From the IMG/VR virus record IMGVR_UViG_3300048008_000449, positions 62,001-126,000 of that record: 64,000 nt of DNA. One strand, given 5' to 3'. Each line of letters starts with the position of its first letter. Within the stretch, counting starts at the first letter, position 1. Shown here piece by piece: positions 1,289-50,905 of this stretch. The position numbers were made by a program, and so were the translations under genes. The notes beneath the pieces were generated by a model. It did no database searches. It was not told the DNA's origin and worked only from the letters and a program-made list of their open reading frames with translations.

Positions 1289-1591
1289 TTACCTTTTTTC
1301 AATGCCACGACTGTTCTTACCGCCGCGTTTTCTGATTGTTTCTAATTCTTTATATGTATTAGTGATTGCTGTAATAAATCCTTGTACTAAACCTTTATTA
1401 AGATTATATTCTACATTATCCCAATTTCCCATTTTAGCCATCTCTGCCATTTCAGTGAACATACGTTCTACTTTTTGCTCTAAAGACTTTAAATTCATTC
1501 TACCATATCCTTGTACCAATACTTCTGGGTTATTTGGATCTTCTGGATTTTTAGAATAAATCTCTTCTTTTGCTAGCTGAGATTCTCTCAT
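1289..1591 (-). CDS. Hypothetical phage protein
   Basis: 100-aa ORF with ATGA overlap with the upstream gene. Confidence 0.7.
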   Translation of the reverse strand: MRESQLAKEEIYSKNPEDPNNPEVLVQGYGRMNLKSLEQKVERMFTEMAEMAKMGNWDNVEYNLNKGLVQGFITAITNTYKELETIRKRGGKNSRGIEKR

Positions 1592-1794
1592 CTTTTTATT
1601 ACCTTCACTGTTTCAGTGTAACCGACACTTTGCTTTTTATGTTTACCGTCACCTAAGTATCCTTTTGGATCAACTGCTTTTCTAGCATCTTTTTTCTTAG
1701 TTCCGGGTGTCATAGGAAACGATATGCTGGCAAAATTACCAGACATTGTATCGCCGCCATCGGCATCTTCGGTTATTATATCATATATTTTCAT
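1588..1794 (-). CDS. Small protein with putative capsid-targeting N-terminus (MKIYDIITE)
   Basis: 68-aa ORF; start lies 5 nt downstream of TAAATA. Confidence 0.65.
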   Translation of the reverse strand: MKIYDIITEDADGGDTMSGNFASISFPMTPGTKKKDARKAVDPKGYLGDGKHKKQSVGYTETVKVIKR

Positions 1795-1799
1795 ACAAG

Positions 1800-1805
1800 T
1801 ATTTA
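1800..1805 (-). promoter_or_regulatory. Late promoter TAAATA, leaderless arrangement
   Basis: Minus strand GATAAATA-CTTGT-ATG; resembles the T4 late promoter TATAAATA. Confidence 0.7.
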
Positions 1806-1825
1806 TCTAATTAATATCAAAAGTC

Positions 1826-4328: not shown

Positions 4329-4489
4329 AAACGGCTCATATCAAAACCAGCATCAGTATCTAATGATTCTCTGGAAGTTCCAAAATATCTAGCCCAATAC
4401 TTTAAACGTTCATTTGTACTTAAACGTTTAGCTTCGTGTTCTTTAATCTTTTCTATATAATGAGCAAACTGCTCAGGAGTCATTAACAT
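4325..4489 (-). CDS. Small hypothetical protein, 54 aa (MLMTPEQFAHYIEK...), not in the ORF track
   Basis: TAATG overlap with the upstream stop; fills the gap exactly. Confidence 0.6.
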   Translation of the reverse strand: MLMTPEQFAHYIEKIKEHEAKRLSTNERLKYWARYFGTSRESLDTDAGFDMSRF

Positions 4490-5013
4490 TACTTAATCCT
4501 CTGTAGTAGTTCCTTAAATCCATTCACTGTGTGAATATATTCTTCAATGTCTTTTTGTTTATCTTCATCTGAATCTAGATATAGCATTATTACTTTTTTT
4601 GCTTCTAGTGGTGATACGTTTATTACTATATCATTATAAAACTTAACTGGAAAGGAAGCATTATCCTTTCTTGCTGATATATTGTATAATACTTTCATAA
4701 CTGATGATTGTTTAATTGCTGCTTCCATTAATTTGGATTGTGATTCAGTTAAACCTAAATTATACAGATTATGTGGTGTGCTATTCTTACGTGCTTTTTT
4801 GTGAAGTTCTGCTGGTTTACCTTTGCCAAAAAACTTAGCTGCTTCTATCTCAGTTTGACCCGGTTTAACATCTACAGTAGTATTAACACCTGGAACTATT
4901 ACACCGTCTTCCTTAACGCAATTGTTTACACGCTTGCCTTTGTTTTTTCCTGTGCCGGGCTTAGTTCCTTTTTTCTTATAACCATCCCAACAATCAATTT
5001 CATTTATTTTCAT
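4489..5013 (-). CDS. Modular protein with capsid-targeting-like N-terminus and a CWDGY...NCV mini-domain
   Basis: MKINEI start; SD AAGGA; TAAATA at 5032-5037. Confidence 0.65.
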   Translation of the reverse strand: MKINEIDCWDGYKKKGTKPGTGKNKGKRVNNCVKEDGVIVPGVNTTVDVKPGQTEIEAAKFFGKGKPAELHKKARKNSTPHNLYNLGLTESQSKLMEAAIKQSSVMKVLYNISARKDNASFPVKFYNDIVINVSPLEAKKVIMLYLDSDEDKQKDIEEYIHTVNGFKELLQRIK

Positions 5014-5026: not shown

Positions 5027-6238
5027 TTAACTATTTATCGATTTAAACAGTTCAGTAAACGTTTTTTGCCAATTGGTTTTTCTTAAAACGTCTAATCTTT
5101 CTAAAAAATCTGCACATTCATATATATTACCTTCATATTCCATGGTCATTTTAAGGTAATTTATTAAGTGTTGTATTTTACTTCTATGCTCTGAATTTTC
5201 ATATATATTTATTAAATCTAGCTTTGATTGCTTAGATAATTGCTTGCAGTCAAGCATATGTGGTGTTGATAATATTCTTATATTAATATGGTACTTTTTA
5301 AAATGATCTAACAATTTTAAAAATGTAAATGCATTAAGTACTTGCCATGTAATGCTTATTTCTATTTGTGTATTAGGTAATAGTGTTTCAATACGTTTTA
5401 TGTTTTCATCTAATTTATACCATTTACTAGGAAACCGTATATAATCATTTTGTTCACCAAAATCATCTATACTTACTCTAAGCATTAATTTTTTAAAATG
5501 TTTCCATTGTTCAATTGCACGTTGATGTACATTTGTAATGTTTGTATCGTATTCTAGTGTAACATGTTTACTTACACCCTTGTCTATTAGCTTTTGTAAG
5601 AACACATAATGATTCTCAATAAGCATAGGTTCGCCGCCAACTAGATATACATGTTGTAATTGATCTATATTATTTTCTAATTGTTCCCAAAAATGTTCGC
5701 TTTTCCACCAATCATAATTAGTATCATTCTTATCATTGATTTCTACTTTTGTATTACTATCATAAAAATGATCAGTATTATATACACTTGCCCAATCTTT
5801 GTACCACATGCTACTACTTTGTGGCCCACACATTACACATTTTAAATTACATAGATTACCAAAACGCAAATCCCAATATATAGGCATTTGTGTTGTACTA
5901 CCATCTGCATCTGTTAGTTTAACTGCTTTATCATAATCAATTATATCCTTGTACATACTGTTTGTAAATGTACGTCTACTTTTACCTCCGTTAGCTTCTT
6001 TTGTCCAACAAGTAGAACATTCAGCAGGCTTTTCACCTGCTAAGAATTGTTTACGAATATTACGAGTAAATTCGCTATTGTGTATTTCTTCTATTGAGTG
6101 AGTTTTAAAATTATGTCCAGTTTGTCCGCCGTTGCCAGAATCATGGTTACTCATTAAACAACATACTCTGCTTGCTCCGTTTGTTTTACTGGCTGAGTGT
6201 ATCCAAGGAATGGAACAAAAACTATTCTTCTGCATCAC
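5027..6238 (-). CDS. Radical SAM protein with N-terminal SPASM/twitch domain
   Basis: CSIPW...VCC...CSTC, then CNLKCVMC, GGEP, SIDD. Confidence 0.9.
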   Translation of the reverse strand: MMQKNSFCSIPWIHSASKTNGASRVCCLMSNHDSGNGGQTGHNFKTHSIEEIHNSEFTRNIRKQFLAGEKPAECSTCWTKEANGGKSRRTFTNSMYKDIIDYDKAVKLTDADGSTTQMPIYWDLRFGNLCNLKCVMCGPQSSSMWYKDWASVYNTDHFYDSNTKVEINDKNDTNYDWWKSEHFWEQLENNIDQLQHVYLVGGEPMLIENHYVFLQKLIDKGVSKHVTLEYDTNITNVHQRAIEQWKHFKKLMLRVSIDDFGEQNDYIRFPSKWYKLDENIKRIETLLPNTQIEISITWQVLNAFTFLKLLDHFKKYHINIRILSTPHMLDCKQLSKQSKLDLINIYENSEHRSKIQHLINYLKMTMEYEGNIYECADFLERLDVLRKTNWQKTFTELFKSINS

Positions 6239-7400
6239 CGTAGATCCAATCAGCTAGTTCCGGATCAAAACTTTCCATTGTTACTTTACCGTAGCTATCG
6301 TAATATTCAACAAATTGTTTTACTGTTGCTTTACGTTTTGGATCATTGTTAAAAGGTCTTCGCATTTCATTTATAACATGATCAACGCCTTCTAGTTTTA
6401 TTTTGTTGTCTTCGAAGAATTTTAATGATTCAGCTTTGAATCTATCTGGAATGTTTTCCATAAGAACTTCAGTCTTATTAATAACTGGTCTTATTTGTAC
6501 TTTAGCATCTGGGTAATGTTCCCATAAGTACTTTATTAGTTTTGGAATATGTCTTACACTTAAACTGTTAGCTGTAATATCCCATATACGCAATTTAAAT
6601 TCTTTGTAATATTGGTCCATGACTGCAATCTTTTCTTCCCAAACATCTTCTTGTCTTGTCCAGTCATTTGCTTTACCCCAACCATCAATACTAAATCTTA
6701 AATTTACATTTTCAACAGTTTTAAATTTTTCTAAATCTTTTTGTCTTAGTAGCCTAGTACCATTTGTGTTAATAACAAAACGTGCATCAGGAGCAAGTGA
6801 TCCTAAACGTTGTACTGTTGTTGGAAAATTTTTAAGATAAAAAGGTTCACCACCAGCTAAGTATACATGTTTTAAATCTTTATCAACACTACTAATAATA
6901 TTATCCCATGCTTGTGGATCGTCACTCCAATCATAATTGCTTTTGTGATATTTTTTTGCTTCTTTTTCTAAACGTCCTTCTTTCCAATTAAAATGTTTAG
7001 CCATTGTTTTATGGTTTTGTAATATCTTGTTACTGTTACCAGCAAAACACATAACACATGCTAAGTTACATACGTTACCTAATCTCAAATCAAGTGCATG
7101 TATTTTTTCATCTTGGAAAGGTACACCTTTATTAATCATACCTAGTGCTTTTTGTCTAAAACTACGTACACCTTCACGTTCTGGATCATAACATTTAAAA
7201 CAACCCATAGGTTCACCACCGTCTGCAATTTCTGCTCTAACGCTATGCATCTCTGGACTATTCCAAATCTCACTTAGTTTATAATCTTTAATGTGATATT
7301 GATCTAGTTTGTTTTTTAAGTTTTTACAACATAATGCTACATAACCGTCATTATCAACGAACGTAAAATTATTTGTATATATACAATATTTGTCTGTCAT
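6222..7400 (-). CDS. Radical SAM protein with N-terminal SPASM/twitch domain
   Basis: C...LCC...CFKC, then CNLACVMC, GGEP, TNG, SIDG. Confidence 0.9.
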   Translation of the reverse strand: MTDKYCIYTNNFTFVDNDGYVALCCKNLKNKLDQYHIKDYKLSEIWNSPEMHSVRAEIADGGEPMGCFKCYDPEREGVRSFRQKALGMINKGVPFQDEKIHALDLRLGNVCNLACVMCFAGNSNKILQNHKTMAKHFNWKEGRLEKEAKKYHKSNYDWSDDPQAWDNIISSVDKDLKHVYLAGGEPFYLKNFPTTVQRLGSLAPDARFVINTNGTRLLRQKDLEKFKTVENVNLRFSIDGWGKANDWTRQEDVWEEKIAVMDQYYKEFKLRIWDITANSLSVRHIPKLIKYLWEHYPDAKVQIRPVINKTEVLMENIPDRFKAESLKFFEDNKIKLEGVDHVINEMRRPFNNDPKRKATVKQFVEYYDSYGKVTMESFDPELADWIYGDAEE

Positions 7401-7456: not shown

Positions 7457-7720
7457 TTAGTCTGTGATTACAGCGTCAAAATGATCTAAGTAAAATTGCT
7501 TTAGTACATGATGATCAATATCTTTGTGAGCATTTCCAATATTCATTGTATACCATCCTAGTGCATGTCTAAACACACCGCCATTTTCTTTTTCTTTACG
7601 CAATAATATTTTATGTAATTTTTCTGCTACACGTCTGTATTTGTCTCTGCTAACAACTGGTTTAATTCTACGAACCATATTAGTCCATGGACTAGCTTCT
7701 GTTACTTCGTTAATTAACAT
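7457..7720 (-). CDS. Hypothetical protein with capsid-targeting-like N-terminus (MLINEVTE)
   Basis: 87-aa ORF overlapping the upstream stop. Confidence 0.65.
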   Translation of the reverse strand: MLINEVTEASPWTNMVRRIKPVVSRDKYRRVAEKLHKILLRKEKENGGVFRHALGWYTMNIGNAHKDIDHHVLKQFYLDHFDAVITD

Positions 7721-10700
7721 CGTCTAATTCCTCCGGTACACCAATATCTTTAACTACATTATTATCTTTAACTGCCTGTTTAACATATTGTGCTGCTTCT
7801 TTAGTCCAGTTCTTATTCATTGCTGTAAGTAGAGATTCAAAACTATTTAAATCTTTTCCACTATCTAGTTTTAATACTTTTGCAATTTCATCAGCTTGTT
7901 TCCAAGGACCGTCAATTGTTTCGTTTTTATTTTTCTTAGTATATCCTGTACCTGCTTTATTTGGAACAGGTGTACGCTTAACACGTAACAATCCTTCAGT
8001 TGGACTCCACATATAACGTAATTCTTCCATAGCACGACCGTCTTCTAGTTTAGCATCACTTTGTTGTCTATCAAGTACTGCTGCCATTGAAGCTATCATT
8101 ATATTACGGAATACACCTTTGTATTTTGATTCTTCTTCACTTGGGCTATGGTAATAAGTTTTCATCCAACCTGGATCGCCTGGCATGAAATCTACTTGTA
8201 CAAATCCTGTACGTGGTCTTCCATCTGTGTGTTCTTTATTAAAGTTTTGTATTTCAACTTTTGTCATTATAACACTTGATTTTGCAATATCTTTAATTAG
8301 TGGATTCTTTTTAAGTTTCTCAACAAATGCTGGTAATTCTTCTGGGGGTAAGTTTAATGCAACATCTATGTCGCCACTAAATTGTCTTTTTCCTACACTA
8401 CCTAATGTAAAGTTATTTAAATCTATACCTAATGATTTTTCTAACATTTCTAACGTAGGCTTTATTTCATCAATGTGTATAGCACCAACACCTGGCATTG
8501 CTCCGCCTTCGTTAAGTGTAAAGTACTTGTTAATTAAGTTTGTGTTTTCAAATGTACCATATTTTTGTGTCCATTTGTATAAGTTTGTTTTATATTTGTC
8601 ACTTACTCCAAAATCCCAAGCACGTCTTGGTCTAGTTGGTGTTTGTCCTGGTCTAGTTCTAATATTTGGTTTTGGTGCAGGAACTGGTCCTGGAGCAGGA
8701 GCAGGAGCTGGTTCTGGTGCCGGGAATGGTTCAGGAATTGGTTCTGGCGAAGGAACTGGATCTGGTGAAGGAACTGGTTCTGGTACTACGCTAGGCACTT
8801 CACTTGGAAGTGGATCTGGATCAGTTGGCTGTTCTGGTTTAGCTGGAGCCTCAGGATCTATATCTGGATCAGTAGTTGGTTCTGGTGCAACTGGGCTATC
8901 AGGCTCAGGTGTTAAATCTGGTTGTGTTGGAGATACAGGATCTATTTCCGGTGCATTGCCTGGAGCAGGATCTGTCTGTGGTTCACTTGGAAGTGGATCT
9001 GGATCAGTTGGCTGTTCTGGTTTAGCTGGAGCCTCAGGATCTATTTCTGGATCTGTAGTTGGCTCAGGTGCTTCTGGACTATCAGGATCACTTGGAGCAT
9101 CTGGTTGCTCAGGAGCATCTGGTTTTACATCAGGAGCTTCACCCGGTGCTGGATCTGTCTGTGGTTCACTTGGAAGTGGATCTGGATCAGTTGGCTGTTC
9201 TGGTTTTGCTGGAGCATCTGGATCTACTTCTGGATCAGTAGTTGGTTCCGGTGCTTCTGGATTTTCTGGTTCTTTACCTGGCTGTGGTTGTTCAGGTGAA
9301 AACGGTGTTACTTTTGGTTTCTTCTCAGGTTCTACTGGCTCTTCTTCTGGCCCTTTAGGTAATGGTTCTTGATCAGGTGCTTCTGGCTTTGCAGGTGCAT
9401 CTGGATCTATATCTGGATCTGTTGTAGGATCAGGAACTTCTGGATTCTCTGGTTCTTTACCTGGCTGTGGTTGTTCTGGAGCATCAGGTTCTATATCTGG
9501 GCCTGGCTCTAATGGTTCACTTGGAAGTGGTTCCTGTTCAGGTGCTCCTGGTCTAGCAGGCGGAAAAGGAATAACTTTAGGTCTAGTAATAGGAATTTCT
9601 ACAGGAGGTTTCTCTGGATCTATTTCTGGAGTCTTTGGTTGTTTTGGTGTATCTGGAACAATTACAGGCTTTGGAGGTAACGGATCATTAGCTGGTAATG
9701 GGTCACCATCTGGCTGTGGTACTCTCTGTGGTAATGCATCATATACTGGTGGAGCATCATTTGCTGGTAATGGAAACATTCCTATATCTTCTGGTGCTTC
9801 AGGAGATAACAATTGTTCTGGTGATGTTGTCATTACTTCTGGTGCTATTTCGTTTGCCGCACGTTGTAATGCTGGATCAACCTTACCAATTAAATCATCT
9901 AATGCTTTTTGAGTTTTTGCTTTACGCATTTTTTCAGCTAAATCATCAGCTGCTTTTTTAAGACCAGGATCAATCACTCCTTCGAGTGATTTAACAATCT
10001 CATCGTTTCTGTATCCTTGAGCAGTTTGATAATCAAAATCGTCCTTGTATCCATCTGGATCAGTTTTATATTTCTTTGTTGTTTTATACCAATCTATAAT
10101 ATCTTGCATAGCTTGGGTTGGATCTGATTTAATATAATCTTGTTGTATCTTCCATTGCAATAATTGCTCATCTTTTAGAGTACCATCACCTAATGTACTA
10201 GGAGTGATTATATTTAAAACTACACCGCCAAATATTCTAGGAAGTGCTTTCAATCCTAACTTAGATAAATTTTTCCAATCTAATTTTGGAGGCTTAACAT
10301 TGTCGTTTGCTGCAATTAACTGTTTCATCATTGCTGGATTTTTTATAAAATAGTTACTAACACTTATTCTAATTCGAGGATTATTTTTAAATTTGTCTGG
10401 AAATAGTTGTGTAACTTTACCAACTGATTGATTGGCTGATGATTTTGATACTCCATATTTTTGTTGAAAGTCTGCAGGATTCATGTTATTAAATAAGTCA
10501 ACTGCTGGCATCCCTTCCATAAGAGCCTCAATTGATTCCATGATCATTTTACTTTGTTTATTATCGCTATAAAAATTAAATGAGTTTACTTGAAATTCTT
10601 TATTTGGAGTTTTAAAGTTATTCTTACGCATAACTGTTTTTGCAATAAGATCTAATTCATTGTTGTTATTATCCCAACGTAAAACAAAAGGAATATTAAC

Positions 10701-10967
10701 ATCTGTTGCTAAATCTTTAAGAACCGCTTCAGAATCTGGACCAAGGCGAGCAATTTGCTTGCCCCAATATTTGTATTCTTGTTTAAATAAACGAGTCAGC
10801 TCACTTGCCGTAATCTGTTTTACATTACGTTCATCGTTTAATCTATCTAAAAAATGTCTTGTAAATTCAACATCAATACCAATTTTCGCAAATAATCTAT
10901 CTGCGAATACCTCAATTTGGTCCAGTTCCTGTTGCGATAATTTTCTGTCTACTTCAAATATTCTCAT
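7710..10967 (-). CDS. 1085-aa multidomain protein: N-terminal FTRHFLDR domain, Pro/Glu/Asp repeat linker, C-terminal Pol-beta-type nucleotidyltransferase
   Basis: MRIFEV start; LGSVGK...SGDIDV (GS, DxD) and a third Asp in QVDF. Confidence 0.75.
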   Translation of the reverse strand: MRIFEVDRKLSQQELDQIEVFADRLFAKIGIDVEFTRHFLDRLNDERNVKQITASELTRLFKQEYKYWGKQIARLGPDSEAVLKDLATDVNIPFVLRWDNNNNELDLIAKTVMRKNNFKTPNKEFQVNSFNFYSDNKQSKMIMESIEALMEGMPAVDLFNNMNPADFQQKYGVSKSSANQSVGKVTQLFPDKFKNNPRIRISVSNYFIKNPAMMKQLIAANDNVKPPKLDWKNLSKLGLKALPRIFGGVVLNIITPSTLGDGTLKDEQLLQWKIQQDYIKSDPTQAMQDIIDWYKTTKKYKTDPDGYKDDFDYQTAQGYRNDEIVKSLEGVIDPGLKKAADDLAEKMRKAKTQKALDDLIGKVDPALQRAANEIAPEVMTTSPEQLLSPEAPEDIGMFPLPANDAPPVYDALPQRVPQPDGDPLPANDPLPPKPVIVPDTPKQPKTPEIDPEKPPVEIPITRPKVIPFPPARPGAPEQEPLPSEPLEPGPDIEPDAPEQPQPGKEPENPEVPDPTTDPDIDPDAPAKPEAPDQEPLPKGPEEEPVEPEKKPKVTPFSPEQPQPGKEPENPEAPEPTTDPEVDPDAPAKPEQPTDPDPLPSEPQTDPAPGEAPDVKPDAPEQPDAPSDPDSPEAPEPTTDPEIDPEAPAKPEQPTDPDPLPSEPQTDPAPGNAPEIDPVSPTQPDLTPEPDSPVAPEPTTDPDIDPEAPAKPEQPTDPDPLPSEVPSVVPEPVPSPDPVPSPEPIPEPFPAPEPAPAPAPGPVPAPKPNIRTRPGQTPTRPRRAWDFGVSDKYKTNLYKWTQKYGTFENTNLINKYFTLNEGGAMPGVGAIHIDEIKPTLEMLEKSLGIDLNNFTLGSVGKRQFSGDIDVALNLPPEELPAFVEKLKKNPLIKDIAKSSVIMTKVEIQNFNKEHTDGRPRTGFVQVDFMPGDPGWMKTYYHSPSEEESKYKGVFRNIMIASMAAVLDRQQSDAKLEDGRAMEELRYMWSPTEGLLRVKRTPVPNKAGTGYTKKNKNETIDGPWKQADEIAKVLKLDSGKDLNSFESLLTAMNKNWTKEAAQYVKQAVKDNNVVKDIGVPEELDDVN
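8800..9540. repeat. Imperfect tandem repeat, 183-nt (61-aa) period, about 4 units, Pro-rich
   Basis: tcagttggctgttctgg recurs at 8821, 9004 and 9187; tctgg(t/c)tttgc at 9199 and 9382. Confidence 0.9.
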
Positions 10968-10972: not shown

Positions 10973-10978
10973 TATTTA
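10973..10978 (-). promoter_or_regulatory. Late promoter TAAATA, leaderless arrangement
   Basis: CATAAATA-GTTGT-ATG(10967). Confidence 0.7.
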
Positions 10979-10993
10979 TGCAAAACGCATACC

Positions 10994-11353
10994 TTACATT
11001 AAAAACACTATTAGAGCATATGTAGCATAGTGGAATATCTGATCAAATGTTTGTAATCTCCAAAATCCTGGCCCTTCTCGTGATATATTAAATTTCTTTA
11101 GTATATTTGACTTAGTAAAATCAATATGCCAGTGACATATATAGTCTAAAATAGCAAATAATACTGCTGATAATGGATTAATAAAAAACAATAATGTTAT
11201 AAAAGTTAGTACACTATGATCTAACGAGTGTAAATGTAATCCTTTATTAAAATACAAATGTTTTTTTGACGGCACTCTGAATGATTGTACCGCTAGATCT
11301 GCTACTGCATGTTTACACATCAATGCAAACAATATTATTGTTTCTAATTCCAT
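10994..11353 (-). CDS. DUF3307-like membrane protein
   Basis: HxxAD-xx-Q, H..H, HWHID, DQxxH motifs with TM segments; start re-called at MELETII. Confidence 0.7.
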   Translation of the reverse strand: MELETIILFALMCKHAVADLAVQSFRVPSKKHLYFNKGLHLHSLDHSVLTFITLLFFINPLSAVLFAILDYICHWHIDFTKSNILKKFNISREGPGFWRLQTFDQIFHYATYALIVFLM

Positions 11354-11355
11354 TA

Positions 11356-11574
11356 TTATTTTCCTGTTGGTTTTTCGCCTGTTAAGTGAGGTTTTGAAAA
11401 CCACAACTTAAACCAATCGTCTGTTCCAGGCTTTATATTCTTTTCACGTTGTATACGTCCTTTTTCAGAACCTGTAACACTAATGTTACTTTCGTCTTTT
11501 CCTTTTATAGTATTACCTTCCTTGTCAATAATACCTGCAAGTCTTTTTAATTCATAAATCTCATCTATTTTCAT
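11356..11574 (-). CDS. Small protein with MKIDEI start and LKRLAGI motif, putative internal head protein
   Basis: 72-aa ORF in the late operon. Confidence 0.6.
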   Translation of the reverse strand: MKIDEIYELKRLAGIIDKEGNTIKGKDESNISVTGSEKGRIQREKNIKPGTDDWFKLWFSKPHLTGEKPTGK

Positions 11575-11575: not shown

Positions 11576-12754
11576 TTATTTATTTCCTAAGTTTGCTGGA
11601 CGTGGTTTTGGTTTTACTGTTGTTGTTTTTTCTAAATCTGCTGGACGTGGTTTTGGTTTTACTGTTGTCGTAGTTTGATCTTTTCCTAAGTTTGCCGGGC
11701 GTGGTTTTGGTATATTAGTTTGTGCTGGTACTGTAGGTTTAACTACAGGTGGCTTTGGATGTGGATGTTGGTGTCCTTGGCTCATATCCGCACTTGGACT
11801 ATGTTGACCTTTTTTCATAATTATTGGAACATTGCCTCGAATAGGTTTATTAATATCTTTTTGCATTGGATCAGATTTGTACGTATCAATTGGGTGCATG
11901 TCATAGTGATCATTTGGAACTGTTTTTAATGGATTCCATGTTGATTGTCCACCAGTTTTTGTTCCTGGTCCATCAGTCTTATGTTTAATTTCATTATCAA
12001 ATTTTGGTCCTGTTTTTCTATCTTGTATAGTCATCATAGGTGTATCAGTATTTGTAGGAGGGTTCATTTTCAATTGCCATTCGTCATAATCTATTCTCTT
12101 TTCAGCTACCCTAGCCATCATTTCTTTATGGTAAGCTGCATATGCTTTATAATGAGTATTTAGACTAGGAACATCTGCTTGAATTTTATCTGTGATACCT
12201 CTGAATTTATTATCTTCAGGTTTTTCTACGTTTTGTATTGCATGCTGTAATTCATGAACGGCAGTAAATCTATTAAGACTATCTGGACTCATGGTTATTG
12301 TTTTTGTACCAGCATCCCATTGTCCTAATGTTTTGCCACCATCTTCTGAATCTTCTAAATCATCTACTATAATATTGTAATCTTTTAAAAATGGATATGC
12401 TTTGTAAAGTTCAGGATGATCAATTAGATCACTAAATTTATACTTTTTGCCTATCTTTGCTCCATGATCTTTTATTTTAAGATCTTTATCAGATACTTCT
12501 TGTCGCCAATCACCATTTGGAGTTCTAAACGTTCCTGTTTCCCACCAAATATCAACTCTACTCCAACCTTCCTTTTCCATTTTCCTTGCAAGTTTTTCTC
12601 TGCTTTTATCATATATTTTAGCTTTTGGTCCAATAAATGTAGCTAACTTATCGTCACCTGGTAACTCGCCTTTCTTACGCTTAGACGAATTCATTTCTTT
12701 ATCAGATGTTGGCAGTCTTTCAAATAACTTATTTGTAATTTCGGTTATCTTCAT
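11576..12754 (-). CDS. LPD23-like domain with zincin HExxH motif and C-terminal Pro/Thr repeats
   Basis: IWWETG...DWRQEVSD...HPELYKAYP...HELQHAIQ; MKITEI start. Confidence 0.65.
   Translation of the reverse strand: MKITEITNKLFERLPTSDKEMNSSKRKKGELPGDDKLATFIGPKAKIYDKSREKLARKMEKEGWSRVDIWWETGTFRTPNGDWRQEVSDKDLKIKDHGAKIGKKYKFSDLIDHPELYKAYPFLKDYNIIVDDLEDSEDGGKTLGQWDAGTKTITMSPDSLNRFTAVHELQHAIQNVEKPEDNKFRGITDKIQADVPSLNTHYKAYAAYHKEMMARVAEKRIDYDEWQLKMNPPTNTDTPMMTIQDRKTGPKFDNEIKHKTDGPGTKTGGQSTWNPLKTVPNDHYDMHPIDTYKSDPMQKDINKPIRGNVPIIMKKGQHSPSADMSQGHQHPHPKPPVVKPTVPAQTNIPKPRPANLGKDQTTTTVKPKPRPADLEKTTTVKPKPRPANLGNK
11583..11712. repeat. Three coding repeats of (TTTVK)PKPRPA(N/D)L
   Basis: gg(a/g)cgtggttttgg occurs three times. 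Confidence 0.85.
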
Positions 12755-14598
12755 TTCTTTTTTCCTGCCTTCATGTTAGCACACCAGTGATACATTTTAG
12801 CTTTCTCACCGCTGGCTTTTTTTGCTTTGGCTCTTAGTTCTGTTACGCTACCGTTACAACTAGCACCACTACGTTTTACACGCCCTGGTCTGCTTTTGCC
12901 TTTTACTTTACCGTCTGCAAAGTTTTCTTCTACTGGTTCTTTATTGTCTACTGTTTGTGCCAATTTAGAAATTGTATCTCCAACTTCTATATTCTTATGT
13001 TGTATTCCAACACCCCCTGCATTTTGCCACTTGTTAATATTTTCTCCAAAATCATCAATTAATACATTTGAAGTTCCATCAGATTGTTTAGCGTATGCGG
13101 CTTTGTTGTGGTCAATAATAATTTTTGCTGGTGGGAACATACCTAAATGCTTTTTAATCCATTCACGCTTCTGTGGCTCTGAATTTGGATCTCCTGGAAG
13201 AGGTGCACTTAATATATTATATTTTCCTTTAAACTGCTTAATTGCGTTTAATAGATTTTTTGCATTACTTGTCATTGGTAAATTAATCCAAAAGTCATCT
13301 GTATCTTTGATTTTTTGTAATGCTTTGTTAACATCTGGAATATTTTTCCAATGTTTAACTCCCATCATTTTATTCCATACTCCAAAGAAGTCTGCTAATA
13401 CTCCATCCATGTCTACGTATATTTCTGATTTAGGTCCTACATCTTCAAGTATACTTTGAATATCTTCACCTAATAAATCTTGTTTAGTTGCTTTGAAATT
13501 GCTTTGCTTCCATTGTTGCTTTAGTGTATTTAATGTTTTACCAATTTCTGGTCCTTGAGGTACACCTTTAGCAATTAAGTCAGCACCGTTTACAGGAAAT
13601 TCTGGTACTGATGTAACCATAGCATGATCAGCCATTTTCTTTTGATCTTGTAATTCTGCTAGTGCTGATATTTTTTCTTTAGCTATACCATCAGCAATCA
13701 TATCTTCCACTTTCTTTTTATCAAGTTTATTATCTTTATTTTGAGATAAAAAGTTTAATAAATCAGCTTCTGTGTTTTTCATCTTCCAACGTTTTGCAAT
13801 GTCTACACTATTATTTAATTGTGCTAATACTATAATTGGATTACTATTATCTTTTACTGTGTTTAAATTATCTACATTAAGTCCTATTACTTGTGCTGCA
13901 CCTGTGTCTTTTATTGTTGCTAATATATTTGCAACGTTTTGTCCTGAAAGTATTTTGCCCATTTCTGACCAAATTCTTTCTGCACTTATTTGTGATAGTC
14001 CTTTTACATTAGAACTAATAGCTTCTAGTGTTTCTTTGTCCCAAGTAGGAGTTGATAATCTTCCTTGGAAACGGAAGTAACGTAATATACGTAAATAATC
14101 TTCTTGAATTCTATCTGCTGGATTTCCTACAAACTTACTTACTTTATCTTGTAAGTCGTCCATACCACCAAAGTAATCATGTATTTCGCCATCTAAATCC
14201 ATACTCATAGCGTTGTATGTTAAGTCTCTGCGTTTAGCATCTTCTTCCCAACTACGTACAAATTCTACCTTAGCATGTCTACCATCAGTTTCTTCATCTG
14301 ATCTTAATGTTGTAATTTCGTAAGGTTCGTTATTAATAACGGCTGTTATAGTTCCATGTTCTATACCGGTTGGTATATGTTTGATCATTGCTCTGTCAAA
14401 CATTTTTTGCATTTCTTGTGGAGTAGCATCAGTAGCTAAGTCAATATCTTTTGGTGATTTACCAAGTGCAACATCTCTAACTGCTCCGCCAACAATTCTT
14501 ATTTCAAAATTATGTCTTGCGAAGATACTGCCTAATTCTTTAACATCAGGTGATATTATACTTGTATCCTTGACTTCAGTTACTTCAAATATTTTCAT
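12751..14598 (-). CDS. cca: Class II CCA-adding tRNA nucleotidyltransferase fused to a HAD 5'(3')-nucleotidase-like domain and a small Cys-containing C-terminal module
   Basis: GGAVRD, DIDLAT, EITTLR, EDAKRRDLTYNA, EDYLRILR; then YVDMDGVLADF...LIDD. Confidence 0.9.
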   Translation of the reverse strand: MKIFEVTEVKDTSIISPDVKELGSIFARHNFEIRIVGGAVRDVALGKSPKDIDLATDATPQEMQKMFDRAMIKHIPTGIEHGTITAVINNEPYEITTLRSDEETDGRHAKVEFVRSWEEDAKRRDLTYNAMSMDLDGEIHDYFGGMDDLQDKVSKFVGNPADRIQEDYLRILRYFRFQGRLSTPTWDKETLEAISSNVKGLSQISAERIWSEMGKILSGQNVANILATIKDTGAAQVIGLNVDNLNTVKDNSNPIIVLAQLNNSVDIAKRWKMKNTEADLLNFLSQNKDNKLDKKKVEDMIADGIAKEKISALAELQDQKKMADHAMVTSVPEFPVNGADLIAKGVPQGPEIGKTLNTLKQQWKQSNFKATKQDLLGEDIQSILEDVGPKSEIYVDMDGVLADFFGVWNKMMGVKHWKNIPDVNKALQKIKDTDDFWINLPMTSNAKNLLNAIKQFKGKYNILSAPLPGDPNSEPQKREWIKKHLGMFPPAKIIIDHNKAAYAKQSDGTSNVLIDDFGENINKWQNAGGVGIQHKNIEVGDTISKLAQTVDNKEPVEENFADGKVKGKSRPGRVKRSGASCNGSVTELRAKAKKASGEKAKMYHWCANMKAGKKK

Positions 14599-16027: not shown

Positions 16028-16300
16028 TTACAATATAAACAATTGTATAAAAGCCCAACCATTCATTAGTGTAAACCAACAACATAGTACTATAGCACTA
16101 CTACCACGTCTATATGTGCTAAAGACTGCTAACATACTACCAATTAAGTATAAAGGTATAAAAATTGTTGTAGCTGGGTCTAAAATAGTAAAACTAAGTA
16201 TAGCACTTGCTATAATAAGAACTGTAGTTTCAACTATTTCTGCATAAAATGCTGTTCTATCTGTTTTATAACTTTTTTTAAAAAACTCAATTATTTTCAT
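16028..16300 (-). CDS. Small membrane protein
   Basis: Three hydrophobic segments. Confidence 0.6.
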   Translation of the reverse strand: MKIIEFFKKSYKTDRTAFYAEIVETTVLIIASAILSFTILDPATTIFIPLYLIGSMLAVFSTYRRGSSAIVLCCWFTLMNGWAFIQLFIL

Positions 16301-25027: not shown

Positions 25028-25633
25028 TCAATTTCGCAATTCTTTATACTGGATAACTGTTTCAATTCTAATATTAAGATCATCGCTATGTGATAGTTTA
25101 AACAACATCATTGTTTCTTCACTGTTGCAAAACACAATTGGAACACTTTCTCTATTTCTATGCATAAAGTATCTAATGTGTACTATACGTCTATCATGGA
25201 AATCAAAGTTATCATATATCCATTTTATAGTAGCATTGTCTTTTTCTAGTGTACCAACACCATACTTTGGCCAACTTATTAGTTTATGTTTGTAGTTGTT
25301 ATACCATAACTTATCACGTATAACAACACTTCTATCTTTTTCGTATAATAGTTTTTTATGTGTATCACTTATTGGTTCGTGTATTTTATCTATTTTTCTA
25401 TATAAGAAATCATCAGATTTTATCTGATCAACCATATCAACGTCAGATGTATAAACTGCTAAATTATATGTTGTTTCTGATTTTTTTGTTTTAACACCAC
25501 GCCATATTGTTTGACCATCTAATCCTATTTTAGGATAATTGAAAACGTAGTTAAACGGCAGGTCTAGAAATTTAATACATGTATCAAAGTATCTGTAATA
25601 TAATGACTGCGATGGAAATACATTATTTTCCAT
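25028..25633 (-). CDS. Hypothetical protein
   Basis: Start re-called at MENNVF, overlapping the clpA stop. Confidence 0.6.
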   Translation of the reverse strand: MENNVFPSQSLYYRYFDTCIKFLDLPFNYVFNYPKIGLDGQTIWRGVKTKKSETTYNLAVYTSDVDMVDQIKSDDFLYRKIDKIHEPISDTHKKLLYEKDRSVVIRDKLWYNNYKHKLISWPKYGVGTLEKDNATIKWIYDNFDFHDRRIVHIRYFMHRNRESVPIVFCNSEETMMLFKLSHSDDLNIRIETVIQYKELRN

Positions 25634-27887
25634 TAATAAGTAACTTGTCTTTTTGCCAATCAAGCTCCAATGTAAACTCGCCTTCATTATTAAGTAGATA
25701 TTTTGCTAATGGTAATTTTACTGATTCGTTGATTACTCGTTGTAGTGGTCTTGCACCCATTGTAGGATCGTACCCTTTATCTTCTAGCATGGCTAATAAT
25801 CCTGGTCCCCACTGTAATACAATATTTCTACCTTCAACATATGATTCTAATTCTCCTAAGAACTTAATAACAATACGTTTCATATCATTTTGCTCTAGTG
25901 CGTTAAATTTAACAATTCCATCTAATCTATTTCTAAACTCTGGAGCAAAGTAATTGTTTACTGCATCATCAACTGCTTTTGCATTAAATGTTTCTTCGTT
26001 GAATCCAATTGTAGCAATTGCCGCATCTTTTGCACCTAGGTTACTAGTCATAATAATAATTGCATTTTTAGCACTTACTACTTTACCTGTACTGCTCGTA
26101 AGTGTACCTTCATCAAGTAAACTTAACAATACACTCATTAAGTCAGGGTGTGCTTTTTCTACTTCATCTAATAACAATAAGCAATTTGGATTATCTTCTA
26201 GATGACTTATTAGTAAGCCATCTCCTGCTTTACCATCACCATGTCCTACATAGCCTGGAGGTGATCCAATTAGTTTTGATACTGTATGACGTTCTTGATA
26301 TTCTGCCATATCATAACGTACAAGTTTCATACTCATTGCTTGTGCTAGACGTTTAGCAAGTTCTGTTTTACCAACACCTGTTGGACCCGTAAACAAATAA
26401 CTAGCAACAGGTTTAGTAGGATCTTTTAATCCAGCCATGCTAACTGTAATACTATCTACTACACGATCAACTGCTGGTTGTTGTCCAAATACTGTACTTT
26501 CTAAAAATGTTTTAACTTCTGTATGTTTTGTTACAGTCTGTTTATCTTCTACGTTACCTAAATGTTCTTTTGGTATTCCTGTAAGTCTTGCTACCTCTGC
26601 TCTAATTTCTTCTTCGCCTATAATAGTTAAGCGATCTGCTTCTGGTAAAATTCTATTAAATGCACATGCTCTATCAAGTATATCAAATGCTTTGTCTGGT
26701 AATTTCTTGTTAAAGATATATTGGTCACTTAGTTCAACTGCTAATTCTGCGGCATCTTCAGTAATACTAACATTGTGATAATGTTCATAAGATATCATTG
26801 TACCTCTAACTACTTCTTTTGCCTCAATTATATTAGGCTCATCACATACAACTTTTGTAAACCTACGTGCCAATGCACTTTCTTTTTCAAATACTTTTCT
26901 ATATTCTTCGTCTGTTGTAGCACCAATAACTTTTAGTTTTCCACTACTCAATGCAGGCTTTAACATATTACCAGCATCCATAGTACCATTTGTACTACCT
27001 GCTCCAATAATTTGATGTATCTCATCAATGAATAAAATAATGTTAGGCTCTTTAATTAATGCTTCGCCTAATTGTTTCATACGTTCTTCAAAGTCACCTC
27101 TATATTTGGTACCAGCAACTAACTTAGTCATATCTAATTCCCATACAACCTTGTCTTTAATAATGTCTGGAACGTTACCTTCTACAATAAGTTTTGCTAA
27201 TCCTTGTACAACTGCTGTTTTACCAACACCACTTCCACCTGTTAAAATAGCATTAGATTTTTTCTTACGTGCTACTGTTTGTACTAGGTCTTTTAATTCT
27301 TTTCTACGGCCAATTAAATCATCATAATCTTGGCTTTCTTCATTTAAATTATTACAAAATTGTTTTAATACTTCACGTGGAGTTACTGCTCTCTGACCGC
27401 CTGGTCCTGGCATACCTGCAGCCATACCATCTACTGGTCCAAAGATTTGTTCATCTTTCATTGCGGCTGTATCTTGCATCCAACTCATTACTTTGTTTTT
27501 GTTTAGGCCCAATTGTTCTGCATATTTAGATGACACACTATGTTCTTCACCTAGTATACTCAATACTAAGTCAAGTTGGTTAATTACTTTTTTGCCTTGA
27601 AACAATGCTTGTGTTAACGCACGATTAAATACACGTTCTAACATTTGTGTCTTAGCAGGATTTGGTTCTTCTTTAGTATTTTTTACTAATTCTTTACATT
27701 CTTTTTCTAAGTATTCAATTAATGCAATTTGCAAACTTTCTGCATCTGCATTAATTTCGTAACACATTGCTATTACATGTGGGTCGTCTAGAATCACTGC
27801 GGCTAAGTGTTCTATTGTAACATATTCGTGTTTGAACTTCTTAGCTAAGTTAATTGCTGTTATTACTATTTTTTCAATGTCTGTCAT
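25623..27887 (-). CDS. clpA: ATP-dependent Clp protease ATP-binding subunit ClpA
   Basis: Clp-N (HEYVTIEHL), two AAA+ modules (GVGKT/FIDEIH; GPTGVGKT/LLDEVEKAHP), IGF loop, no ClpB M-domain. Confidence 0.93.
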   Translation of the reverse strand: MTDIEKIVITAINLAKKFKHEYVTIEHLAAVILDDPHVIAMCYEINADAESLQIALIEYLEKECKELVKNTKEEPNPAKTQMLERVFNRALTQALFQGKKVINQLDLVLSILGEEHSVSSKYAEQLGLNKNKVMSWMQDTAAMKDEQIFGPVDGMAAGMPGPGGQRAVTPREVLKQFCNNLNEESQDYDDLIGRRKELKDLVQTVARKKKSNAILTGGSGVGKTAVVQGLAKLIVEGNVPDIIKDKVVWELDMTKLVAGTKYRGDFEERMKQLGEALIKEPNIILFIDEIHQIIGAGSTNGTMDAGNMLKPALSSGKLKVIGATTDEEYRKVFEKESALARRFTKVVCDEPNIIEAKEVVRGTMISYEHYHNVSITEDAAELAVELSDQYIFNKKLPDKAFDILDRACAFNRILPEADRLTIIGEEEIRAEVARLTGIPKEHLGNVEDKQTVTKHTEVKTFLESTVFGQQPAVDRVVDSITVSMAGLKDPTKPVASYLFTGPTGVGKTELAKRLAQAMSMKLVRYDMAEYQERHTVSKLIGSPPGYVGHGDGKAGDGLLISHLEDNPNCLLLLDEVEKAHPDLMSVLLSLLDEGTLTSSTGKVVSAKNAIIIMTSNLGAKDAAIATIGFNEETFNAKAVDDAVNNYFAPEFRNRLDGIVKFNALEQNDMKRIVIKFLGELESYVEGRNIVLQWGPGLLAMLEDKGYDPTMGARPLQRVINESVKLPLAKYLLNNEGEFTLELDWQKDKLLINGK

Positions 27888-41806: not shown

Positions 41807-41823
41807 AAGTATATTTATGAATT

Positions 41824-46108: not shown

Positions 46109-46187
46109 ACAACTATTTATGCGATTAAAACTATACTTTATTTTGGTTTATTAATAAACTCAAGTTCGTCATCAGTGTAAGGCCACA

Positions 46188-50383: not shown

Positions 50384-50905
50384 TTATATTTTCCCGGTTA
50401 CCCTGTTATTTTGTGATGATATCTGCTCGTACTCTACTTCTAATAAGTATGCAAACGTATTTAGCAACTCTTTTGCCATGTCTTGTTTACCACGTTCTCT
50501 ACCTCTTAATAAAACAGTAACCATTAGTTTATTATTTTTTTCCAAAAACTTACGAGCCATTCTGGCCTTTGTTTCTAAATCATGTGTATCAATATTTAGA
50601 CCCATGCGTATTTCTTTGGTCTCAACAACGCTCTCTCGTTGCTTTTTCTTTGCCAGTTTTTCTTTTTGTTTTAACGAGTACAAGTGCTTATTAAGATCAG
50701 TTATTTTGCATACAGGTGGTGTTGCTTTATCTGCAACTAGTATCAAATCTAACCCTAATGACCTGGCCTCTTTTAAAGCATCTGTTGTTGACATGATCTG
50801 GCTTTCCATATCATCACCTGATACCCTAATTTGTTTATGTCTTATCTTCTCGTTGGAAATAACAAAAGGTTTTTCCTCACGTCTTTTATAATTTCTATTC
50901 TGCAT
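50384..50905 (-). CDS. infC: Translation initiation factor IF-3
   Basis: NEKIR, LDLILV...PPVCKI, KEIRM...IDTHDL..K, RGRE; ATG start at MQNR with SD. Confidence 0.9.
   Translation of the reverse strand: MQNRNYKRREEKPFVISNEKIRHKQIRVSGDDMESQIMSTTDALKEARSLGLDLILVADKATPPVCKITDLNKHLYSLKQKEKLAKKKQRESVVETKEIRMGLNIDTHDLETKARMARKFLEKNNKLMVTVLLRGRERGKQDMAKELLNTFAYLLEVEYEQISSQNNRVTGKI

What the first reader, a model, noticed from the sequence alone, without database searches (positions are those of the whole stretch)
7710..10967. 1085-aa protein joining a RegB-like N-domain, a 61-aa Pro repeat and a nucleotidyltransferase
Seen: N-terminal VEFTRHFLDRLNDERN...IAKTVMRK domain; an amphipathic LPRIFGGVVLNIITPSTLGDGTL segment; about 380 aa of Pro/Glu/Asp-rich sequence including a 183-nt-period repeat; and a C-terminal GS..DID NTase after LNE|G. 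Inference: the N-domain recalls the YSQHLLDR motif of T4 RegB (RelE/BECR-fold RNases), a resemblance by eye only. The NTase could be an RNA-tailing, protein-NMPylating or signal-nucleotide enzyme. The repeat could be an extended spacer.
Basis: partly seen in the sequence, partly recalled or inferred. Interest (0 to 1): 0.62.

Follow-up and report, generated by a model that had tools for sequence, protein, structure and literature searches.

The report
Phage polyprotein with PolX-like polymerase
A late gene of an uncultured marine giant phage encodes a 1085-residue precursor whose C-terminal part looks like a stripped-down family-X DNA polymerase; the phage head protease probably cuts it free, and it belongs to a widespread, unstudied enzyme family that usually sits beside a ligase-like gene.

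Summary
The 1085-aa ORF (window 7710-10967, minus strand) is real, and so are its four parts. The C-terminal 265 aa fold confidently (pLDDT 93) into a Pol-beta-type nucleotidyltransferase. Its invariant residues are G856-S857, K860, D866, D868 and D926. Its closest structural relatives are family-X DNA polymerases, which match over palm plus thumb (ASFV PolX: 157 of 176 residues aligned). RNA-tailing enzymes match the palm only. The domain defines a family with no Pfam model (543 clusters at 50% identity). In 56 of 80 viral loci the stand-alone gene is followed directly by a DUF6267 gene, and the two are fused in several large proteins. DUF6267 carries ligase-like KxDG and EG-x-V motifs. Whatever precedes the domain (3 to 1371 residues), the junction reads [LIVMF]-x-E then G-G in 143 of 195 distinct cases. 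This is the cleavage motif of T4-type prohead proteases. The gene has a T4-like late-promoter motif 5 nt upstream of its ATG. Related genomes encode a gp21-type protease, and the PA5oct homologue is recorded in virions. My reading is a head-targeted, protease-processed polyprotein that delivers a minimal PolX-like polymerase. The RegB-like reading of the N-domain rests on one short motif and got no statistical or structural support. The proline repeat is a hypervariable spacer.

The parts
7710..10967 (-). Whole ORF, 1085 aa plus stop (P0001)
   Evidence: identical protein on IMG/VR contig L009/L101
10973..10979 (-). ATAAATA, a T4-type late-promoter-like motif 5 nt before the ATG, with no Shine-Dalgarno between them
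   Evidence: The same motif and spacing precede the large terminase; other ATAAATA-preceded genes are virion structural proteins and a head-tail adaptor.
10953..10967 (-). N-terminal tag M-R-I-F-E, an [LI]xE leader shared with neighbouring genes
   Evidence: 8 of about 273 genes, 0.18 expected. T4 Alt is processed at ITE-6 (PMC5694885).
10584..10952 (-). N-domain, residues 6-128. Invariant residues include H38, R42, D45, R47, N48, K110, R114, K115 and T120. Function unknown.
   Evidence: phrog_23027 at 6e-23 and phrog_14518; more than 1300 relatives, many stand-alone at 128 aa; alignments A2 and A3
10515..10523 (-). L149-M-E151, second candidate protease site, just before G152-M-P-A-V
   Evidence: An [LI]xE site is conserved at this boundary in long relatives.
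9768..10514 (-). Middle region, residues 152-400, found only inside long forms. It contains the moderately hydrophobic Gly-rich segment 237-263 (window 10179-10259).
   Evidence: the atlas lead to Pyocin_S at 0.82 is below the trust level
8643..9767 (-). Acidic Pro-rich spacer, residues 401-775 (34% Pro, net charge -63)
   Evidence: composition and length are hypervariable among relatives
8763..9494 (-). Four tandem 61-aa (183-nt) units, residues 492-735
   Evidence: relative L011 has three copies
8667..8784 (-). 18-nt period repeat (6.6 copies) encoding Pro-x-Pro hexapeptides at the end of the spacer
8508..8642 (-). Basic stretch plus conserved pre-domain segment (residues 776-820, W-D-x-G...L-Y-K-W-x-Q-K-Y-G-T-F-E-N), ending in the L818-N-E820 junction (8508-8516)
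   Evidence: conserved in all long forms; junction statistics; low pLDDT just before G821
7713..8507 (-). PolX-like nucleotidyltransferase domain, residues 821-1085. G856-S857...K860...D866-I-D868 lie at window 8364-8402 and V-Q-V-D926-F at 8187-8201.
   Evidence: A1 invariants; AF2 pLDDT 93.1; Foldseek and VIA matches to Pol beta, Pol lambda, TdT, Thermus PolX and ASFV PolX; giant-virus PolX in BFVD

Best explanation
P0001 is a late-expressed precursor (polyprotein) of a T4-lineage marine giant phage.

Shown: its C-terminal 265 residues form a compact Pol-beta-fold polymerase with a complete two-metal catalytic site. Its nearest structural kin are family-X DNA polymerases reduced to palm plus thumb, as in ASFV PolX.

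Inferred:
- The precursor is addressed to the assembling head by its N-terminal leader or N-terminal part.
- The gp21-type prohead protease cuts it after Glu in [LI]-x-E motifs at the domain borders: E5, E151 and E820.
- This frees a mature enzyme that starts at G821-G822. The enzyme stays in the capsid and enters the host with the DNA.
- The variable acidic Pro-rich repeat is a disposable spacer or propeptide.
- In the cell the enzyme extends a 3' end (gap filling or end tailing, DNA more likely than RNA). It works together with the DUF6267 protein, a ligase-like enzyme with KxDG and EG-x-V motifs that carries the same kind of leader.
- The pair would thus form a fill-and-seal repair unit for phage nucleic acid on entry.

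The role of the N-domain is open. It could be a packaging or anchoring module, or a second effector.
For: Fold and active site:
- G, K, D, D, Q and D are invariant in 61 diverse relatives.
- The model has pLDDT 93.
- Family-X polymerases are the top hits and cover model residues about 10/28-245: Thermus PolX Z 9.5, Pol beta 9.5, TdT 9.0, Pol lambda 9.0, and ASFV PolX Z 8.6 with 157 of 176 residues at rmsd 3.1.
- TUTases, PAP, CD-NTases and MenT cover only 32-138.
- Foldseek gives E 1e-5 over about 230 columns.
- The best PDB profile hit is Pol lambda at E 0.16.

Link to DUF6267:
- In 56 of 80 viral loci the stand-alone gene is followed directly by DUF6267 (example L002).
- The two are fused in 5 of 9 long relatives.
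- Conserved DUF6267 residues are K51-W-D-G54, G138-D139, E349-G-x-V352 and K361.

Processing:
- 143 of 195 distinct junctions read [LIVMF]xE directly before GG. Another 23 proteins start M-G-G with no leader.
- The junction lies in a low-confidence, unstructured stretch.
- A second conserved [LI]xE lies at the N-domain/middle border.
- Nearly all of the 40 distinct DUF6267 proteins carry a 10-aa leader M-[KR]-h-x-[ED]-h-x-L-x-E. It resembles the T4 IPII/IPIII leader MKTYQEFIAE.
- T4 Alt is cut at ITE-6 and LTE-619 (PMC5694885).
- Peptidase_S77 is present in 4 of 5 related large genomes, including the one with the 1075-aa orthologue.

Timing and virion:
- ATAAATA lies 5 nt before the ATG, as for the large terminase.
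- The PA5oct homologue EST35_0231 is annotated as a structural protein by ESI-MS/MS.
Against: - No protease, capsid or portal gene is in the 205-kb record held, which is 56% complete. The protease is therefore not shown for this phage.
- No cleavage or virion data exist for this clade.
- In L002 and S-PM2 the gene pair lies among replication genes rather than head genes.
- Z scores of 9-9.5 are only moderately above the background typical of the search.
- No Pfam PolX family reaches significance; 2 of 61 members hit DNA_pol_B_palm at 0.05.
- The HhH/8-kDa DNA-binding parts of cellular PolX are absent.
- The ligase reading of DUF6267 rests on motifs only; there is no PDB or Pfam ligase hit.
- Neighbours such as the CCA-adding enzyme would fit an RNA substrate equally well.
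Confidence: 0.5

Rival explanations
1. The enzyme is an RNA 3'-end nucleotidyltransferase. It adds nucleotides to damaged tRNA or other RNA ends, and DUF6267 acts as an RNA ligase. The set would be a phage RNA-repair kit against host anticodon or CCA nucleases.
For: - The next gene but one is a CCA-adding enzyme fused to a 5'-nucleotidase.
- L002 has an AAA_33/Zeta-type kinase nearby.
- One relative has a weak RNA_ligase match.
- TUTase and PAP palms match at Z 6-8.
- Jumbo phages commonly carry RNA-repair sets (PMC7824862).
Against: - RNA-tailing enzymes align over the palm only (85-90 residues), whereas PolX enzymes align over palm plus thumb.
- No PAP- or CCA-type RNA-binding domain is detected.
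Confidence: 0.25
2. The protein is not packaged or cleaved. It works intact in the infected cell, with the N-domain and the polymerase tethered by a long flexible spacer and perhaps held at the membrane by the hydrophobic segment. Under this reading the [LI]xE-GG junction is a structural or regulatory motif.
For: - The hydrophobic Gly-rich segment is conserved in position.
- TonB-like Glu-Pro/Lys-Pro spacers occur in relatives.
- No protease gene is present in the record held.
Against: - 23 family members lack any leader and start M-G-G, so the motif is not needed for the fold.
- The junction lies in an unstructured stretch.
- The gene has a late-promoter motif.
- Other enzymes of the same phages carry CTS-like leaders.
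- The PA5oct homologue is recorded in virions.
Confidence: 0.2
3. The two ends form an RNase plus nucleotidyltransferase effector pair. The N-domain would be a RegB/BECR-type endoRNase acting on host or early mRNA, and the NTase would modify RNA, proteins or signalling nucleotides as counter-defence.
For: - The H38-x-x-x-R42 helix resembles RegB H48...R52.
- The invariant His, and the conserved Thr111 near the last strand, fit the His-in-helix plus Thr/Ser-in-strand pattern described for phage BECR domains of injected polyvalent proteins (PMC5512222).
- A neighbouring gene carries LPD23.
Against: - hhalign against RegB gives probability 0.35%.
- No BECR, RelE or PBECR hit was found in Pfam for any of 26 members.
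- No PDB hit was found.
- The model is of low confidence and has no BECR match.
- The N-domain is the constant part joined to many different C-terminal parts, which suits a carrier module better.
- CD-NTase and MenT matches are palm-only at Z 5-7.
Confidence: 0.12

Closest known systems
African swine fever virus PolX (minimal family-X DNA polymerase) with its partner ligase
   Same: - Palm plus thumb only, with no 8-kDa or fingers/HhH domains.
- 157 of 176 residues superpose on the model (Z 8.6, rmsd 3.1).
- GS...DxD...D active site.
- Paired with a ligase-type enzyme.
   Different: - No detectable sequence homology.
- An extra helical C-terminal part (about residues 1046-1085).
- A conserved N-terminal G-G-x-x-x-G-x-G-x-I-H segment.
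- Made as part of a precursor with a protease-type junction.
- The partner is DUF6267, not a recognised DNA ligase.
Cellular family-X polymerases (Pol beta, Pol lambda, TdT, bacterial PolX)
   Same: - Best structural matches (Z 9.0-9.5; Foldseek E 1e-5).
- The motif S-G-D-h-D-h resembles the Pol beta active-site strand (by eye).
   Different: - Lacks the lyase and HhH domains, and the PHP domain of bacterial PolX.
- Pfam PolX models do not match at significance.
T4 internal proteins and Alt (capsid-targeted, gp21-processed, ejected proteins)
   Same: - Short N-terminal leader ending in [LI]xE.
- Cleavage after Glu.
- Enzymes delivered with the DNA (PMC3012670; PMC5694885).
- The leaders of the DUF6267 partner closely resemble MKTYQEFIAE.
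   Different: - The cargo here is a polymerase-like enzyme.
- The precursor can be more than 800 residues with internal junctions, more like the long propeptides of phiKZ/SPN3US ejection proteins.
- Nothing has been shown experimentally.
Polyvalent proteins of phages (Iyer et al. 2017)
   Same: - Multi-domain proteins that combine Pol-beta NTases, BECR RNases and other enzymes, thought to be injected.
- Relatives of 1000-2300 aa combine this domain with DUF6267, CTP_transf_like, NUDIX and APH.
- A neighbouring gene has LPD23.
   Different: - No MuF, portal or Zn-peptidase domain.
- Release would be by the prohead protease rather than autoproteolysis.
- The N-domain matches none of the Pfam LPD/PBECR models.
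T4 RegB endoribonuclease
   Same: An eight-residue motif around the catalytic His and Arg ([YF]-[ST]-x-H-h-L-D-R).
   Different: No profile similarity, and no fold evidence.

Membership tests
Pol-beta-fold nucleotidyltransferase superfamily | hG[GS] motif, DxD on the next strand, and a third carboxylate on a neighbouring strand | tested here: met
   G856-S857, D866, D868 and D926 are invariant in 61 relatives. The palm superposes on many NTases at rmsd 2.2-3.
Family-X DNA polymerases | Palm followed by a PolX-type thumb subdomain | tested here: met
   PolX chains align over 156-178 residues spanning model residues 10/28-245. Non-PolX NTases align over only 85-90 residues. Foldseek aligns about 230 columns. 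The Z scores of 9-9.5 are moderate.
Family-X DNA polymerases | Significant sequence match to PolX palm/thumb profiles | tested here: not met
   No Pfam hit for the query. DNA_pol_B_palm hits 2 of 61 members at E 0.05. Pol lambda is the best PDB profile hit at E 0.16.
Family-X DNA polymerases | HhH DNA-binding fingers and 8-kDa lyase domain | tested here: not met
   The domain has no such parts. ASFV PolX also lacks them.
Family-X DNA polymerases | Template-directed or terminal dNTP addition | not testable with these tools
   Needs an enzyme assay.
T4-type capsid-targeted, prohead-protease-processed proteins | Leader or junction with [LI]xE followed by the mature N-terminus | tested here: met
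   I-F-E5, L-M-E151 and L-N-E820 in P0001. 143 of 195 family junctions fit the pattern.
T4-type capsid-targeted, prohead-protease-processed proteins | gp21-type protease (Peptidase_S77) in the same genome | tested here: inconclusive
   Absent from the 56%-complete record. Present in 4 of 5 related large genomes.
T4-type capsid-targeted, prohead-protease-processed proteins | Late expression | tested here: inconclusive
   A late-promoter-like ATAAATA lies 5 nt before the ATG, as for the terminase. RNA-library contigs cover parts of the ORF but cannot prove transcription or timing.
T4-type capsid-targeted, prohead-protease-processed proteins | Presence of the mature protein in virions | not testable with these tools
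   The only indirect evidence is that the PA5oct homologue is annotated as structural by ESI-MS/MS.
RegB / BECR-fold endoRNases | Profile-level similarity to RegB or another BECR family | tested here: not met
   hhalign probability 0.35%. No Pfam, NCBIfam or PDB match.
RegB / BECR-fold endoRNases | BECR fold (N-terminal helix plus a 4-5-stranded sheet) | tested here: inconclusive
   The model has pLDDT 62 and pTM 0.38. Its best matches are generic helical bundles at Z 6.3 or less.
ATP-dependent ligase / capping-enzyme superfamily (for partner DUF6267) | Motif I KxDG, with motifs III, IV and V | tested here: inconclusive
   K-W-D-G, G-D-L, E-G-x-V and K-L-V are at least 92-100% conserved in 40 sequences. 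No profile or PDB match to a ligase was found.

The most novel reading that the evidence does not exclude
Marine T4-lineage giant phages pack a ready-made nucleic-acid repair kit into the head. The kit would comprise a minimal PolX-like polymerase, the ligase-like DUF6267 protein, a CCA-adding enzyme/5'-nucleotidase fusion and others. Each member is addressed by a short T4-CTS-like leader (M-K-I-x-E-[IV]...) and trimmed by the prohead protease at [LI]xE. The kit would be injected with the genome, so that UV- or nuclease-damaged DNA or RNA is repaired before any phage gene is expressed. The protease-exposed N-terminal Gly-Gly of the polymerase may itself be functional.
Probability: 0.3. Interest if true: 0.8.

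Novelty: new variant of a known kind. Interest (0 to 1): 0.62.

Why it matters
Family-X polymerases are known from cells and from large eukaryotic viruses such as ASFV. I found no described phage counterpart in the papers searched. This domain family is abundant: 543 clusters at 50% identity, hundreds of IMG/VR contigs, and presence in many seawater metagenomes. It has no Pfam model and no annotation.

Its tight pairing with DUF6267, a gene also found in many T4-like cyanophages (hits in 83 cyanophage records), suggests a two-enzyme fill-and-seal module that nobody has assayed.

The conserved [LI]xE|GG junction and the CTS-like leaders give a sequence-level way to predict which enzymes T4-lineage phages pack and inject. 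This bears on early infection, counter-defence and repair of sunlight-damaged phage genomes in the sea. A 265-residue polymerase could also be of use as a tool enzyme.

Tried and rejected
- Pfam, NCBIfam and PDB sequence searches of all four parts found no significant hit.
- PHROGs matched only unknown-function families for the N-domain.
- megablast of the region against GenBank phages found no match.
I did not send those rows elsewhere and used A2 instead. That gave a poor N-domain model (pLDDT 62), so its fold search carries no weight.
- hhalign of the N-domain against T4 RegB was negative.
- ESM-Atlas feature searches returned the N-domain's own unnamed viral clusters. For the middle region they returned Pyocin_S/colicin translocation clusters at 0.82, which is below the level to trust.
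- A word search for stand-alone relatives of the middle region found one fragment only.
- The complex-prediction run on residues 821-1085 with the genome's own DUF6267 protein returned 'no answer'. This counts neither for nor against binding.
I used the narrower alignment A4 instead.
- Searches for Peptidase_S77 and Gp23 in the genome's own 205-kb record found nothing, but the record is only 56% complete.
- Paper searches for DUF6267 and for virion-borne family-X polymerases of phages found nothing.
- I considered and set aside a membrane anchor (hydropathy 1.38 is below the usual threshold), a CD-NTase or MenT-type enzyme (palm-only matches), and a shared upstream DNA cassette as the cause of the common N-terminal tags (upstream DNA is not conserved).


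Full report
**Where the window lies.** The window is bases 62001-126000 of a 204,772-base IMG/VR viral contig that CheckV rates 56% complete. The phage therefore probably has a genome of 300 kb or more. G+C is about 33%. The same DNA is present at 99% identity or more in at least 14 seawater or marine metagenome runs from many studies. No cultured phage shares DNA with the region.

**The observation.** The ORF at 10967-7710 (minus strand) is open for 1085 codons.
- An identical protein occurs on a second IMG/VR contig.
- Orthologues of 987-1233 aa occur on others.
- The Pro-rich part (residues 401-775, 34% Pro, net charge -63) holds four 61-aa units.

**The C-terminal domain.**
- *Size and range of the family.* A word search found 1232 relatives. 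The exhaustive search found 543 clusters at 50% identity. They include stand-alone proteins of 280-295 aa, compact 400-aa fusions of N-domain plus C-domain, and long forms.
- *Conserved residues.* In an alignment of 61 diverse members the invariant residues are G57, K61, D67, D69, Q125 and D127 of the piece. These are G856, K860, D866, D868, Q924 and D926 of the protein. This is the classic Pol-beta-fold site.
- *Model.* AlphaFold gave pLDDT 93.1.
- *Foldseek.* The top PDB hits are Pol beta and Pol lambda (E 1e-5, about 230 columns).
- *Independent all-against-all aligner.* Family-X polymerases came first: Thermus PolX Z 9.5, Pol beta 9.5, TdT 9.0, Pol lambda 9.0, and ASFV PolX Z 8.6 with 157 of its 176 residues aligned at rmsd 3.1. 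All cover model residues about 10/28 to 245. Terminal uridylyl transferases, poly(A) polymerases, CD-NTases, MenT and aminoglycoside NTases align over only 85-90 palm residues.
- *Viral models.* After uncharacterised phage proteins, the next hits are giant-virus 'DNA polymerase family X' entries.
- *Sequence level.* Only faint signals appear: Pol lambda at E 0.16, and the Polbeta, DNA_pol_B_palm and NTP_transf_2 families in a few members.
- *Conclusion.* The domain is certainly a Pol-beta-fold NTase. It is probably a minimal PolX-like polymerase of palm plus thumb. It is a family of its own with no Pfam, NCBIfam or PHROG annotation.

**The partner gene.**
- In 56 of 80 IMG/VR loci that carry the domain, the stand-alone gene is followed at once, on the same strand and with overlapping ends, by a DUF6267 gene (example).
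- In 5 of 9 long relatives the two are fused. Some of these also carry CTP_transf_like, NUDIX or APH domains.
- Structure-based atlas neighbours show the same companions.
- Across 40 distinct DUF6267 proteins, K-W-D-G, G-D-L, P-N-x-V-x-Y, H, E-G-x-V and K-L-V-x-R are 90-100% conserved.
- From what is established about covalent nucleotidyltransferases, I read these as motifs I, III, IV and V of the ligase/capping-enzyme superfamily. No profile search confirms this.
- DUF6267 is also found in many T4-like cyanophages (hits in 83 cyanophage records). In S-PM2 it lies near uvsX, gp41, mazG and a 'possible cytidylyltransferase'.
- This genome has its own DUF6267 gene 75 kb away.

**The junction.**
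- Among 195 distinct N-terminal junctions of the family, 143 read [LIVMF]-x-E directly before G-G (or S-G). This holds whether 3 or 1371 residues precede the domain. Another 23 proteins have no leader and start M-G-G, 4 have another residue at the first position of the x-E motif, and 25 do not fit.
- The motif is therefore not needed for the fold. In the model it lies in the unstructured stretch before the domain.
- [LI]-x-E followed by cleavage after Glu is how the T4 prohead protease trims head proteins. T4 Alt, an ejected enzyme, loses six residues at I-T-E and a C-terminal piece at L-T-E (PMC5694885). T4 internal proteins carry a 10-residue capsid-targeting leader (PMC3012670), read here from the T4 record as MKTYQEFIAE.
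- P0001 has only seven [LI]xE sites. Three sit at domain borders: I-F-E5, L-M-E151 and L-N-E820. The second is conserved in long relatives.
- Nearly all of the 40 DUF6267 proteins carry a 10-residue leader of the form M-[KR]-h-x-[ED]-h-x-L-x-E, much like the T4 leader.
- In this genome 8 of about 273 genes begin M-[KR]-[IL]-x-[ED]-[IVLF], against 0.18 expected. Most lie beside P0001 and include the CCA-adding enzyme fusion, the LPD23 protein and DUF6267. Their upstream DNA is not conserved, so the tag is a protein-level feature.

**Timing and lineage.**
- ATAAATA occurs only 82 times in the genome, yet it lies within 30 nt upstream of 19 genes (1.3 expected).
- P0001 has it 5 nt before the ATG. 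The large terminase has the same arrangement. Other genes with the motif are three virion structural proteins and a head-tail adaptor.
- TATAAATA is the T4 late promoter (established knowledge).
- A gp21-type protease (Peptidase_S77) is present in 4 of 5 related large genomes that carry N-domain proteins. One of them also holds the 1075-aa orthologue.
- The protease was not found in the incomplete record of this phage.
- The PA5oct homologue, a leaderless form starting M-S-G-N-A, is annotated as a structural protein found by ESI-MS/MS.
- Contigs from marine RNA libraries cover several parts of the ORF, which fits expression but does not prove it.

**The N-domain.**
- It is a very well conserved module (mean identity 61%) with more than 1300 relatives, many of them stand-alone proteins of 128 aa.
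- It occurs in T4-lineage phages such as Melnitz, phiM12/phiN3 and immuto.
- In IMG/VR it is joined to at least seven different C-terminal parts that have no Pfam match. In phiM12 it is C-terminal in a 602-aa protein.
- Invariant residues across the divergent members include H38, R42, D45, R47, N48, K110, R114, K115 and T120.
All statistical tests were negative and the model was poor.
- The pattern of a His in a helix and a Thr near the last strand matches what Iyer et al. describe for phage BECR domains in injected polyvalent proteins (PMC5512222). I therefore keep that reading as a minority rival.
- That it is the constant part on varied cargo fits a carrier or anchoring role at least as well.

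**The middle region and spacer.**
- The middle region (152-400) is found only in long forms.
- Its hydrophobic segment is below the usual threshold for a membrane helix. Relatives carry more hydrophobic Gly/Ala-rich segments at the same place.
- The spacer differs completely among relatives. It is acidic Pro-rich here, Glu-Pro-Lys repeats in P0245, and Ala/Gln repeats in P0244. The repeat count differs between close relatives, 4 against 3.
- A conserved segment of about 45 residues (basic stretch, then W-D-x-G...L-Y-K-W-x-Q-K-Y-G-T-F-E-N) precedes the junction in all long forms.

**Mechanism proposed.**
- *Shown:* the fold, the catalytic residues, the family, the gene pairing, the junction statistics, the promoter motif and the variation of the spacer.
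- *Inferred:* targeting to the prohead, cleavage at E5, E151 and E820, retention in the capsid and ejection, polymerase activity on DNA gaps or ends, cooperation with DUF6267 as a ligase, and disposal of the spacer as a propeptide.
- *Speculative:* the protease-exposed or Met-trimmed N-terminal Gly-Gly has a catalytic role.

**Limits.** There is no experiment behind any of this. The genome record is incomplete. Structural Z scores are moderate. The substrate (DNA or RNA) is unresolved. The complex prediction gave no answer.

Noticed in passing
window 1588-1794, 4489-5013, 7457-7720, 7710-10967, 11356-11574, 11576-12754, 12751-14598, 16028-16300, 54664-55353; G000:C1:144911-146104: A shared N-terminal tag M-[KR]-I-x-[ED]-[IV] sits on a cluster of otherwise unrelated genes. 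It occurs in 8 of about 273 genes against 0.18 expected. Upstream DNA is not conserved. The tag looks like a short T4-type capsid-targeting/cleavage leader.
   Followed up: partly
window 10973-10979 (-) and 18 other gene starts in G000 (e.g. window 1800-1806, 41812-41818, 46114-46120, 55359-55365): ATAAATA, a late-promoter-like motif, lies upstream of 19 genes in two set-ups. In one it is 5-8 nt before the ATG with no Shine-Dalgarno, which would give near-leaderless mRNAs; the large terminase is in this class. In the other it is 18-23 nt before the ATG with AGGAG in between.
   Followed up: partly
window 12751-14598 (-): A 615-aa fusion of a CCA-adding/poly(A) polymerase head domain with its RNA-binding part, an NT5C-type 5'-nucleotidase and a basic tail. 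It carries the same N-terminal tag.
   Followed up: no
window 11576-12754 (-): A 392-aa protein with an LPD23 domain (a polyvalent-protein-associated domain). Its C-terminal repeats are of the form T-T-V-K-P-K-P-R-P-A-x-L.
   Followed up: no
window 7457-7720 (-), overlapping the end of P0001 by 11 nt: This 87-aa ORF is homologous to the part that directly follows the N-domain in the 614-626-aa proteins of L021/L022. A seawater contig in run X7 joins window position 10624 to 7600, which is that relative's architecture and not a deletion of this gene.
   Followed up: partly
window 5027-6238 and 6222-7400 (-); also 33429-34721 (-): Two adjacent radical-SAM/SPASM genes lie just downstream of the finding, and a third radical-SAM gene lies further on.
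   Followed up: no
window 45134-46108 (-) and 58058-59170 (-): Two separate ATP-dependent DNA-ligase-like genes (phrog_114) lie in the same window, in addition to the DUF6267 gene elsewhere in the genome.
   Followed up: no
window 25623-27887 (-) and 50895-52106 (-): A 754-aa Lon-like ATP-dependent protease (phrog_4871, E 5e-226) and a second AAA+ protein. These are unusual cargo for a phage.
   Followed up: no
L002:6840-7973; L181:2983-4758 (S-PM2d138); 56 of loci L117-L179: DUF6267 has conserved ligase-like motifs (K-W-D-G, E-G-x-V, K-L-V) and a T4-CTS-like 10-aa leader. It is present in many T4-like cyanophages, where it is annotated as hypothetical.
   Followed up: partly
window 10994-11404 (-): A DUF3307 membrane-type protein is encoded directly upstream of P0001.
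   Followed up: no
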